Below, piece after piece: positions 869-1,033 of a stretch of 64,000 nt of DNA. The position numbers and the translations under genes are program-made. The stretch spans positions 13,392,001-13,456,000 of the forward strand of contig NC_043010.1 of assembly GCF_006345805.1 (NCBI RefSeq), in the 5' to 3' direction. The notes beneath the pieces were generated by a model that was given only the letters and a program-made list of their open reading frames with translations, was not told the DNA's origin and ran no database searches. Position 1 is the first letter of the stretch. Each line of letters opens with the position of its first letter. This DNA comes from Octopus sinensis (Eukaryota).

Positions 869-1033
869 TCAAAGCAATTTAGATGCTGCCCCACCTGGTA
901 TTTCTTCATAATGTCTGTTGATTGTGTTCCCTCTAAATTGATGGTCTCTTTTCAATGTTGATGGTGTGGTTATATTTTGACTCTCTTCAACTCCCTTTTC
1001 TTCTCGTATGACTTCAACTTGTGGAATGAAGGC
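869..1033 (-). CDS. Candidate downstream cytoplasmic exon of the protocadherin: AFIPQVEVIREEKGVEESQNITTPSTLKRDHQFRGNTINRHYEEIPGGAASKLL*
   Basis: The acceptor is ttgatattttatag|GCC. The frame is open for 54 codons in phase 0, matching the upstream donor, in non-repetitive sequence with hydrophilic tail-like composition. An internal CAG|GTGGGG (895/894) could instead make it an internal exon. Confidence 0.6.
   Translation of the reverse strand, partial: AFIPQVEVIREEKGVEESQNITTPSTLKRDHQFRGNTINRHYEEIPGGAASKLL

What the first reader, a model, noticed from the sequence alone, without database searches (positions are those of the whole stretch)
869..1033. Remote protocadherin tail exon about 54 kb from the ectodomain exon, with a YEEI motif
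Seen: this exon is absent from the ORF track. It has a clean acceptor and a phase 0 open frame that joins naturally to ...RGPIPTP (predicted intron 55192-1034, 54159 bp; product 846 aa). It encodes RHYEEIP. Established: pYEEI is the classic optimal Src-family SH2 ligand. Inference: this is a tyrosine-signalling tail. Such a distant exon could also be shared by other upstream ectodomain exons, in the manner of a vertebrate constant exon.
Basis: partly seen in the sequence, partly recalled or inferred. Interest (0 to 1): 0.7.

Follow-up and report, generated by a model that had tools for sequence, protein, structure and literature searches.

The report
Annotated octopus protocadherin tail exon

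Summary
The exon is real. The window matches Octopus sinensis chromosome CM016872.1 at every stretch tested. Exon 1 (57568..55193, minus strand) joined to 1033..895 translates with no mismatch to residues 1-838 of RefSeq XP_029645242.1, an 842-aa protein named protocadherin beta-4 isoform X1.

The 3' end is wrong. The annotated exon stops at 895 (CCAG|GTGGGG). A third exon adds DLPT and a stop, and lies 5.9 kb beyond the window edge. The product is 842 aa, not 846. Isoform X2 (797 aa) skips the exon, so it is a cassette exon rather than a terminal one.

It is not a shared constant exon. Every paralog examined has its own tail exons, and a published analysis says cephalopods do not splice many first exons to shared final exons.

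Y[DE]E[ILM]P occurs in 35 of 91 NCBI paralog models, typically about 125 residues after the membrane span, and never in the ectodomains. A phosphotyrosine docking role is plausible but untested.

The exon is already known. The family-wide motif appears undescribed in the papers I could search. Interest is low to moderate.

The parts
55193..57568 (-). Exon 1 coding part (792 codons): signal peptide, six cadherin repeats, membrane span and the proximal 87 cytoplasmic residues, ending ...RGPIPTP. The donor is CCG|GTAAGT, with GT at 55192-55191.
   Evidence: Pfam Cadherin with 6 stretches, plus Cadherin_2. Identical to XP_029645242.1 residues 1-792.
1034..55192 (-). Intron 1, 54,159 nt. It is filled with interspersed repeats, reverse-transcriptase fragments, microsatellites and satellites. 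It contains no second protocadherin exon.
   Evidence: Same length in the annotated locus L006.
895..1033 (-). Exon 2, a 139-nt cassette exon. It enters in phase 0 and leaves in phase 1. It encodes 46 residues, AFIPQ...NRHYEEIP, plus the first base of the next codon.
   Evidence: It is 138/139 nt identical to O. bimaculoides, against about 88% for the surrounding intron. Isoform X2 lacks it.
896..910 (-). Codons for Y834-E-E-I-P838, the family-conserved Y[DE]E[ILM]P motif at the 3' end of exon 2.
893..894 (-). GT of the intron-2 donor (CCAG|GTGGGG).
869..894 (-). It is the start of intron 2 in all models and would be translated only if intron 2 were retained.
1..892 (-). First 892 nt of intron 2, which is 6,753 nt in full. 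Exon 3 (AT TTG CCC ACC TAA, giving DLPT and stop) lies about 5.86 kb beyond window position 1, at L006 73428-73442.
   Evidence: The O. bimaculoides equivalent is shown.

Best explanation
Positions 1033..895 (minus strand) are exon 2 of a three-exon Octopus sinensis protocadherin gene (RefSeq XP_029645242.1, named protocadherin beta-4 isoform X1, 842 aa). Exon 1 (57568..55193) encodes the ectodomain, the membrane span and the proximal cytoplasmic part. After a 54,159-nt intron, exon 2 adds 46 tail residues ending in YEEIP. After a 6.75-kb intron, a tiny exon 3 outside the window adds DLPT and a stop. Exon 2 is private to this gene. In the annotation it is a cassette: skipping it joins exon 1 to exon 3 in another frame, giving ...RGPIPTP-ICPPN (797 aa).

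Shown: the exon structure, its identity with annotated and transcript-derived proteins, and its conservation. The same layout (large exon 1, small exon 2 carrying Y[DE]EIP at or near its 3' end, short exon 3) is also shown in the four paralog genes mapped, one in Octopus and three in Argonauta.

Inferred, at about 45%: Y834 in the acidic Y-E-E-I-P context is phosphorylated and then docks an SH2-domain protein, most likely a Src-family kinase. Including or skipping exon 2 would then switch this signalling output on or off without changing adhesive specificity.
For: Gene structure:
- 0 mismatches over 838 residues to XP_029645242.1.
- All five 100-base stretches and both 200-base ends of the reverse-complemented window that I tested match L006, collinearly at 3569..67568.
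- Exon 3 and its acceptor are seen in L006 and L001.
- The O. bimaculoides ortholog has the same three exons, with introns of 30.9 and 3.7 kb.
- O. vulgaris QBA31146.1 carries the same exon 1-2-3 product. It appears to come from the RNA-seq transcriptome set of Styfhals 2019.
- Isoform X2 in O. sinensis and O. bimaculoides ends ...RGPIPTPICPPN. That is exon 1 read straight into exon 3.

Conservation:
- Exon 2 is 138/139 nt identical between O. sinensis and O. bimaculoides, with 0 synonymous changes.
- Exon 1 has pS 0.124, and the local intron is about 88% identical.
- Only 2.4% of 139-column windows in the local alignment are as conserved as the exon.

Family:
- Strict Y[DE]E[ILMV]P gives 36 hits in 16,853 cytoplasmic residues and 0 hits in 77,994 ectodomain residues.
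- It occurs in 35 of 91 NCBI models, mostly 116-139 residues after the membrane span.
- Y, the second E and P are invariant in the tail alignment, which also lines up the exon 1/2 junction.
- The three-exon layout recurs in P0006 and in three Argonauta genes.
- Long isoforms with the motif and short ones without it are annotated for five further paralog clusters in two species.

Function: a pYEEIP-containing phosphopeptide is described as the cognate ligand of the Fyn SH2 domain, with KD 327 nM (bioRxiv 10.1101/2020.10.30.361790). The vertebrate Pcdh-alpha intracellular domain interacts with Fyn (Kohmura 1998, as cited in PMC6339937).
Against: - The RefSeq isoforms are computed models, and I could not inspect junction reads for O. 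sinensis itself.
- Nothing shows that Y834 is phosphorylated or that any SH2 domain binds it.
- YEEI also fits the generic YxxPhi adaptor-sorting motif.
- The proline codon plus G forms the CAG of the splice donor, so part of its conservation could be a splicing constraint. In the Argonauta genes, though, the donor lies three codons further on and the proline is still there.
- About 40% of the NCBI paralog models sampled lack the motif even in relaxed form.
- A competing O. vulgaris model (CAI9732516.1) gives the gene a different tail.
Confidence: 0.85

Rival explanations
1. The exon is as described, but YEEIP works unphosphorylated as a YxxPhi tyrosine-based sorting signal. Clathrin-adaptor mu subunits would read it to control endocytosis or dendrite/axon trafficking of the protocadherin. 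Exon skipping would then change surface residence, not signalling.
For: Y-E-E-I fits Y-x-x-hydrophobic (sequence). The motif sits at a fixed distance from the membrane in the paralogs. It lies in a region with no Pfam domain match, so it is probably an unstructured tail. From general knowledge, protocadherin surface delivery in vertebrates is controlled by the cytoplasmic domain.
Against: A generic YxxPhi signal does not require fixed residues at +1, +2 and +4. Here +2 E and +4 P are invariant, and +1 is only E or D, across 36 occurrences. That points to a more selective reader.
Confidence: 0.25
2. One reading: exon 2 is terminal. The transcript would run through the GT at 894-893 to the TGA at 871-869, giving an 846-aa protein ending GGAASKLL.
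For: The frame stays open for 8 more codons. The read-through stop is also present in O. bimaculoides, as GGAVSKLL*. The donor GTGGGG is not a strong match to the consensus, so some intron retention is conceivable.
Against: All full-length models (O. sinensis, O. bimaculoides) and the GenBank O. vulgaris protein end ...YEEIPDLPT. Exon 3 has a good acceptor that is identical in the two species. An intron directly after the YEEIP codons plus one G is also found in the distant paralog P0006. In 24 of 36 motif occurrences the next residue is G, A, D, E or V, all encoded by G-first codons, which fits that intron position.
Confidence: 0.05
3. The exon is a shared, constant-type exon used by several upstream ectodomain exons, as in the vertebrate Pcdh alpha and gamma clusters.
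For: The architecture looks superficially similar: one very large variable-type exon and a small tail exon tens of kb away. Protocadherin genes lie in head-to-tail arrays on one chromosome (PMC6339937; PMC9795677).
Against: - There is no other protocadherin exon in the window.
- The 83-kb locus holds one called gene.
- None of the other 119 paralogs listed carries this tail.
- O. sinensis paralogs on the same chromosome have their own, different YEEIP tails.
- Argonauta tandem genes with almost identical tails each have their own copies of exons 2 and 3 inside 3.6-5.3-kb genes.
- The published statement is that cephalopods do not use shared final exons (PMC9068888).
- No Pfam family was returned for the tail.
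Confidence: 0.03
4. The true partner of the ectodomain exon is not this exon. As in O. vulgaris model CAI9732516.1, an internal donor in exon 1 (ATG|GTAAGG, GT at 55333-55332) would splice to coding sequence inside intron 1.
For: That model exists in the database (883 aa). The internal GTAAGG is a strong donor-like site.
Against: Its C-terminal 128 residues are a translation of the 147-bp satellite at 16734-19681. Many overlapping tblastn hits show 36-69% identity there. That is typical of an ab initio artefact. The model also has an aberrant N-terminus. The other O. vulgaris protein (QBA31146.1) and the RefSeq models agree on exon 2.
Confidence: 0.02

Closest known systems
RefSeq gene model XP_029645242.1 / XP_029645243.1 (protocadherin beta-4 isoform X1, Octopus sinensis), with orthologs XP_014775550.1 (O. 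bimaculoides) and QBA31146.1 (O. vulgaris)
   Same: It is the same gene. Exon 1 and exon 2 as found in the window give residues 1-838 with no mismatch. The orthologs differ at 51 and 9 residues, and their tails are identical apart from Q824R.
Constant exons of the vertebrate clustered protocadherin alpha and gamma loci
   Same: There is one large exon for the ectodomain, membrane span and proximal cytoplasm, and distant small exons for the distal cytoplasmic tail. That tail is linked to tyrosine-kinase signalling: Pcdh-alpha binds Fyn (cited in PMC6339937).
   Different: This exon is not shared between genes. No Pfam family, including the vertebrate protocadherin tail families, was returned for the tail. 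The coding part is much smaller, 46 + 4 residues. The exon is a skippable cassette.
Vertebrate non-clustered (delta) protocadherin genes such as PCDH19 and PCDH10 (gene structure from general knowledge, not tested here)
   Same: Each gene has a private set of small cytoplasmic exons after a very large first exon, with long introns, and alternative splicing produces long and short cytoplasmic tails.
   Different: Published searches did not find the CM1, CM2 and CM3 motifs that define the delta families in octopus protocadherins (PMC6339937). The Pfam Protocadherin family scored below threshold, and only over the membrane-span region.
pYEEI, the preferred ligand of Src-family SH2 domains
   Same: The tail contains exactly Y-E-E-I-P. 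A pYEEIP-containing phosphopeptide is used as the cognate Fyn SH2 ligand, with KD 327 nM.
   Different: This is only a sequence match. Neither phosphorylation nor binding has been shown for any cephalopod protocadherin.

Membership tests
Octopod protocadherin genes with a three-exon layout and a Y[DE]EIP tail | Cadherin_2 N-terminal domain, six cadherin repeats and one membrane span, all encoded in one large exon | tested here: met
   Pfam Cadherin E 1e-75 with 6 stretches, and Cadherin_2 E 1e-9. A single 2,376-nt exon.
Octopod protocadherin genes with a three-exon layout and a Y[DE]EIP tail | Phase-0 intron at the homologous point of the cytoplasmic domain (after ...R-x-L-P-x-x-x-Q/K/P), followed by a small exon 2 of about 46-53 codons | tested here: met
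   Junctions were mapped in P0001, P0006, P0059, P0087 and P0102. They line up in alignment A2.
Octopod protocadherin genes with a three-exon layout and a Y[DE]EIP tail | Y[DE]E[ILM]P roughly 116-139 residues after the membrane span, at or near the 3' end of exon 2 | tested here: met
   In this gene the motif starts 125 residues after the membrane span. The family has 36 strict occurrences, all cytoplasmic.
Vertebrate-type clustered protocadherin constant exon | One tail exon set spliced to many alternative upstream ectodomain exons | tested here: not met
   One ectodomain exon in the window. One gene in the 83-kb locus. No other listed paralog has this tail. Private tail exons in tandem paralogs. 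Literature statement in PMC9068888. Junction reads were not available.
Vertebrate-type clustered protocadherin constant exon | Sequence homology to the vertebrate constant region (Pfam protocadherin tail families) | tested here: not met
   hmmscan of the cytoplasmic region at E<=10 returned only one spurious sub-threshold family.
Src-family SH2 docking site | Sequence Y-E-E-I, acidic at +1 and +2 and aliphatic at +3 | tested here: met
   Y834-E-E-I-P at 910..896. Conserved in paralogs.
Src-family SH2 docking site | Tyrosine phosphorylated in vivo and bound by an SH2 domain | not testable with these tools
   This needs phosphoproteomics and binding assays.
YxxPhi adaptor-sorting signal | Y-x-x-bulky hydrophobic in a cytoplasmic tail | tested here: met
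   The sequence fits. The invariance of +2 and +4 goes beyond what this class requires. The sorting function itself cannot be tested here.

The most novel reading that the evidence does not exclude
Y[DE]E[ILM]P could be a previously undescribed signature of the octopod protocadherin expansion. It would be a phosphotyrosine docking site, encoded at the end of a skippable exon, that couples homophilic adhesion to Src-family or other SH2 signalling. Alternative splicing would turn it on or off gene by gene. This would be a convergent counterpart of the Fyn-binding constant tail of vertebrate Pcdh-alpha, achieved with private exons rather than shared ones.
Probability: 0.3. Interest if true: 0.6.

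Novelty: already known. Interest (0 to 1): 0.25.

Why it matters
Little is at stake for the exon itself, because it is already in RefSeq and in GenBank protein records for three Octopus species. Two things are useful.

First, this is a clean negative for the idea that octopus protocadherins use vertebrate-style constant exons. Remote tail exons with introns of 31-54 kb turn out to be the normal private structure of these genes.

Second, the cytoplasmic tails have been reported to lack vertebrate motifs. The published octopus-specific motif list that I could read contains only ectodomain, membrane-span and PP1 patterns (PMC6339937). These tails nevertheless share a short, position-fixed YEEIP motif on a cassette exon. 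That gives a concrete, testable handle on how about 160 octopus protocadherins might signal.

Tried and rejected
1. A word-index protein search with the 140-residue cytoplasmic region returned nothing, although exact matches exist in the database. It is a false negative, not evidence of absence. The profile search with the tail alignment behaved the same way. It returned only three short ORF fragments from Logan assemblies, P0179-P0181. I therefore could not determine how deep the motif goes in squid, cuttlefish, nautilus or other molluscs.

2. The exhaustive representative search gave one hit, P0126. It is an unrelated repetitive protein and the match is spurious.

3. The open frame and acceptor do not discriminate the exon from hundreds of alternatives, so they are rejected as evidence for it.

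4. The long ORFs inside the intron are microsatellite or satellite translations or reverse-transcriptase fragments, not exons.

5. Albertin 2015 (Nature) could not be read. Its motif list was taken second-hand from Styfhals 2019 Table S2.

6. ITIM, ITSM and WIRS readings of the tail were considered by eye and rejected, because the flanking residues do not fit those consensus patterns as I recall them.

7. Comparing O. sinensis with O. bimaculoides is of limited power on its own. The species are close, and the flanking intron is 86-96% identical in most 100-column blocks.

Full report
**What is at the coordinates**

On the minus strand, a tttatAG acceptor (AG at 1035-1034) is followed from 1033 by an open frame. 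It encodes AFIPQVEVIREEKGVEESQNITTPSTLKRDHQFRGNTINRHYEEIPGGAASKLL and a stop at 871-869.

The large minus-strand ORF at 57568..55193 encodes a signal peptide, six cadherin repeats, a membrane span and 87 cytoplasmic residues. It ends ...RGPIPTP directly before GTAAGT.

**Is it more than chance?**

Not on sequence alone. The same strand of the 55-kb interval has 192 stop-free stretches of at least 54 codons and 300 AG-preceded phase-0 frames of that length. The true acceptor has a poor pyrimidine tract, 10 of 20. The exon had to be validated from outside the window.

**Validation**

Its C-terminus reads ...RGPIPTP-AFIPQVEV...NRHYEEIP-DLPT. Its 90% cluster also contains:
- O. sinensis XP_029645242.1 and XP_029645243.1 (842 aa)
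- O. vulgaris QBA31146.1 (842 aa)
- 797-aa isoform X2 proteins in O. sinensis and O. bimaculoides

Window exon 1 plus 1033..895 translates to 838 residues with zero mismatches to the O. sinensis protein. Fetching that protein's locus showed where the window comes from. Five 100-base stretches and both 200-base ends of the reverse-complemented window match L006 collinearly at 3569..67568. L006 is from O. sinensis chromosome record CM016872.1, assembly GCA_006345805.1.

In that locus the gene has three coding exons:

| Exon | L006 | Window (minus strand) |
|---|---|---|
| 1 | 10001-12376 | 57568-55193 |
| 2 | 66536-66674 | 1033-895 |
| 3 | 73428-73442 | about 5.86 kb beyond position 1 |

Exon 3 reads tctttcag|AT TTG CCC ACC TAA. 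Intron 2 is 6,753 nt.

The O. vulgaris protein appears to belong to the set that Styfhals et al. 2019 derived from an RNA-seq transcriptome and deposited in GenBank (PMC6339937 supplement). I could not match the protein accession to their nucleotide list. If it does belong to that set, it is transcript-level evidence for the exon 1-2-3 junctions in a sister species.

The exon ends at 895, at CCAG|GTGGGG. The product is 842 aa, not 846, and the exon is internal.

Isoform X2 (...RGPIPTP-ICPPN, 797 aa) is exon 1 read straight into exon 3 in the other frame: ATT TGC CCA CCT AAC TAG. In the annotation, exon 2 is therefore a cassette. Its weak acceptor and non-consensus donor fit that status (my reading of the sequence).

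**Conservation**

O. sinensis and O. bimaculoides are collinear across the whole locus. Figures:
- Exon 2 differs at 1 of 139 nt, a Q-to-R change. It has no synonymous difference, where about 3.6 would be expected at the exon-1 synonymous divergence of 0.124.
- The surrounding 1.35 kb is about 88% identical.
- Only 2.4% of 139-column windows reach the exon's identity.
- Exon 1 evolves under moderate purifying selection (pN/pS 0.22).

The lack of synonymous change fits an alternatively spliced exon that carries splicing signals. With one species pair, this is suggestive only.

**Family context**

Among the 120 best paralogs (Octopus spp., Argonauta hians, a few decapodiforms and unannotated assemblies), a strict Y[DE]E[ILMV]P pattern occurs 36 times in 16,853 cytoplasmic residues and never in 77,994 ectodomain residues. 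It is present in 35 of 91 NCBI models, and 18 more have only a relaxed form. It almost always lies 116-139 residues after the membrane span.

An alignment of 21 distinct tails keeps Y, the second E and P invariant. It also lines up the exon 1/2 junction...R-S/T-L-P-x-x-x-Q | x-Y..., with this gene's ...RGPIPTP | AF....

Exon mapping shows the same three-exon plan elsewhere:
- In O. bimaculoides protocadherin-18 the introns are 38 and 42 kb, and exon 2 ends ...QYEEIP+G|GT.
- In three tandem Argonauta genes the introns are 0.6-1.7 kb, and exon 2 ends three codons later...YDEIPTES+G|GT.

In 24 of 36 occurrences the residue after the proline is G, A, D, E or V, all encoded by G-first codons. That fits a phase-1 intron at this point.

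RefSeq also lists long isoforms with the motif and short ones without it (795-818 aa, exon 1 joined directly to a later exon). This holds for five further paralog clusters, in both O. bimaculoides and O. sinensis for four of them.

**Shared constant exon?**

No evidence supports it and several lines oppose it:
- tblastn with nine diverse protocadherins finds one ectodomain exon in the window, plus exon 2.
- The 83-kb O. sinensis locus and the 57-kb O. bimaculoides locus each contain one called gene.
- Other O. sinensis protocadherin genes on the same chromosome are separate units of 39 to 107 kb with their own, different tails.
- The Argonauta genes whose tails are almost identical are compact tandem duplicates of 3.6-5.3 kb, each with its own exons 2 and 3.
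- Albertin et al. 2022 state that cephalopods do not splice diverse first exons to shared final exons and that diversity arose by full gene duplication (PMC9068888).
- No Pfam family, including the vertebrate protocadherin tail families, was returned for the tail.

**How it probably works**

What is shown: a private cassette exon adds a 46-residue tail whose only family-invariant feature is YEEIP.

What is inferred: the motif is a binding site. The fixed E at +2, E or D at +1, an aliphatic residue at +3 and an acidic context match the classical preference of Src-family SH2 domains. A pYEEIP-containing peptide is described as the cognate Fyn SH2 ligand, with KD 327 nM. The intracellular domain of vertebrate Pcdh-alpha also binds Fyn (cited in PMC6339937).

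I therefore favour, at about 45%, a phosphotyrosine docking site whose presence is set by exon-2 inclusion. The main rival, at about 25%, is a YxxPhi sorting signal. It fits the sequence but does not explain the invariant +2 and +4 positions. The remainder is some other short linear motif.

The proline's conservation may partly reflect the CAG|GT donor. However, it persists in the Argonauta genes, where the donor has moved.

**Comparison and novelty**

The exon is already annotated, so the finding is already known. In architecture the gene resembles vertebrate non-clustered protocadherins more than the clustered alpha and gamma loci. Each gene has a large first exon, private small cytoplasmic exons, long introns and alternative tails.

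The family-wide YEEIP motif seems not to be described. The octopus-specific motif list reproduced by Styfhals 2019 from Albertin 2015 contains only EC1, EC5, EC6, membrane-span and PP1 patterns. Wang and Ragsdale reportedly found no analogy with vertebrate intracellular motifs. The 15 best-ranked of the 42 papers that contain the string YEEIP concern SH2 ligands, peptide reagents or vaccine design, and none concerns protocadherins. I could not read Albertin 2015 or Wang and Ragsdale 2017 directly, so this novelty claim is provisional.

**Verdict**

The exon, the splice join and the motif are correct. The 3' boundary is wrong, the constant-exon idea is unsupported, and the signalling role is plausible but untested. 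The finding is of low to moderate interest. The motif and its splice-dependent inclusion are the part worth following up.

Noticed in passing
window 16734-19681: A 147-bp satellite with 19.9 copies and strong strand skew (GC skew about -0.6 to -0.7) lies inside intron 1. The O. vulgaris gene model CAI9732516.1 (P0121) translates an array like this as a 128-residue G/V/D-rich C-terminus, after splicing from an internal donor in exon 1 (ATG|GTAAGG, GT at 55333-55332). This is probably an annotation artefact.
   Followed up: partly
window ~700-853 and 14 other sites (e.g. 4806, 20616, 22151, 32150, 46479, 61130): An interspersed SINE-like element is present. Its 20-nt core occurs 15 times in the window, against 0.01 expected. 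The same insertion is present at the orthologous site in O. bimaculoides.
   Followed up: partly
window 41881-43849; 9995-10367, 53740-54295 and 62885-64000; 35060-35766: Further tandem arrays lie in and around the intron. There is a 58-bp AT-rich array (34 copies), three arrays of 184-bp units, and a 61/123-bp GC-rich array.
   Followed up: no
window 24610-25872, 13512-13888, 36611-37125, 57879-58819: Long tri-, di- and tetranucleotide microsatellites are present: (TGA)n of 1.26 kb, (TGG)n, (TG)n and (TATA)n. They create the long spurious ORFs in the ORF list, such as the 616-aa ORF at 24499-26349, which has no significant Pfam match.
   Followed up: partly
window 33929-35011 (+) and 39580-40656 (-): Intron 1 contains ORFs with weak reverse-transcriptase (RVT_1) and PHD-finger matches. 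They are decayed retroelement fragments.
   Followed up: no
paralog proteins P0022, P0023, P0035, P0037, P0038, P0043, P0048, P0060, P0068, P0073, P0083 and others; also P0018, P0020, P0032, P0042, P0050, P0052, P0066: Two other recurrent C-terminal motifs occur in octopod protocadherins. One is W-N-L-P-M-R-N-S-F-T-S-Y-x-K-P-L-P-A-V-P-K at the extreme C-terminus, sometimes in the same protein as YEE[LM]P (P0013, P0083). The other is Y-P-Q-Y-E-S-Q-S-E-W. Upstream of YEEIP many paralogs also share D-[ST]-G-H-x-W-[ST]-E-G-D.
   Followed up: no
window 55193-57568 compared with L001 10001-12376: The ectodomain exon differs from its O. bimaculoides ortholog at 4.8% of nucleotides and 51 of 792 residues, with pN/pS 0.22. 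This is ordinary purifying selection, with no sign of diversifying selection at this coarse level.
   Followed up: partly
tools: The word-indexed protein search missed exact matches for short queries. The 140-residue cytoplasmic region gave no hits. The 63-column tail profile gave only three short ORF fragments. Full-length family members carrying identical stretches are in the database. Negative results from short queries with that tool should not be trusted.
   Followed up: yes
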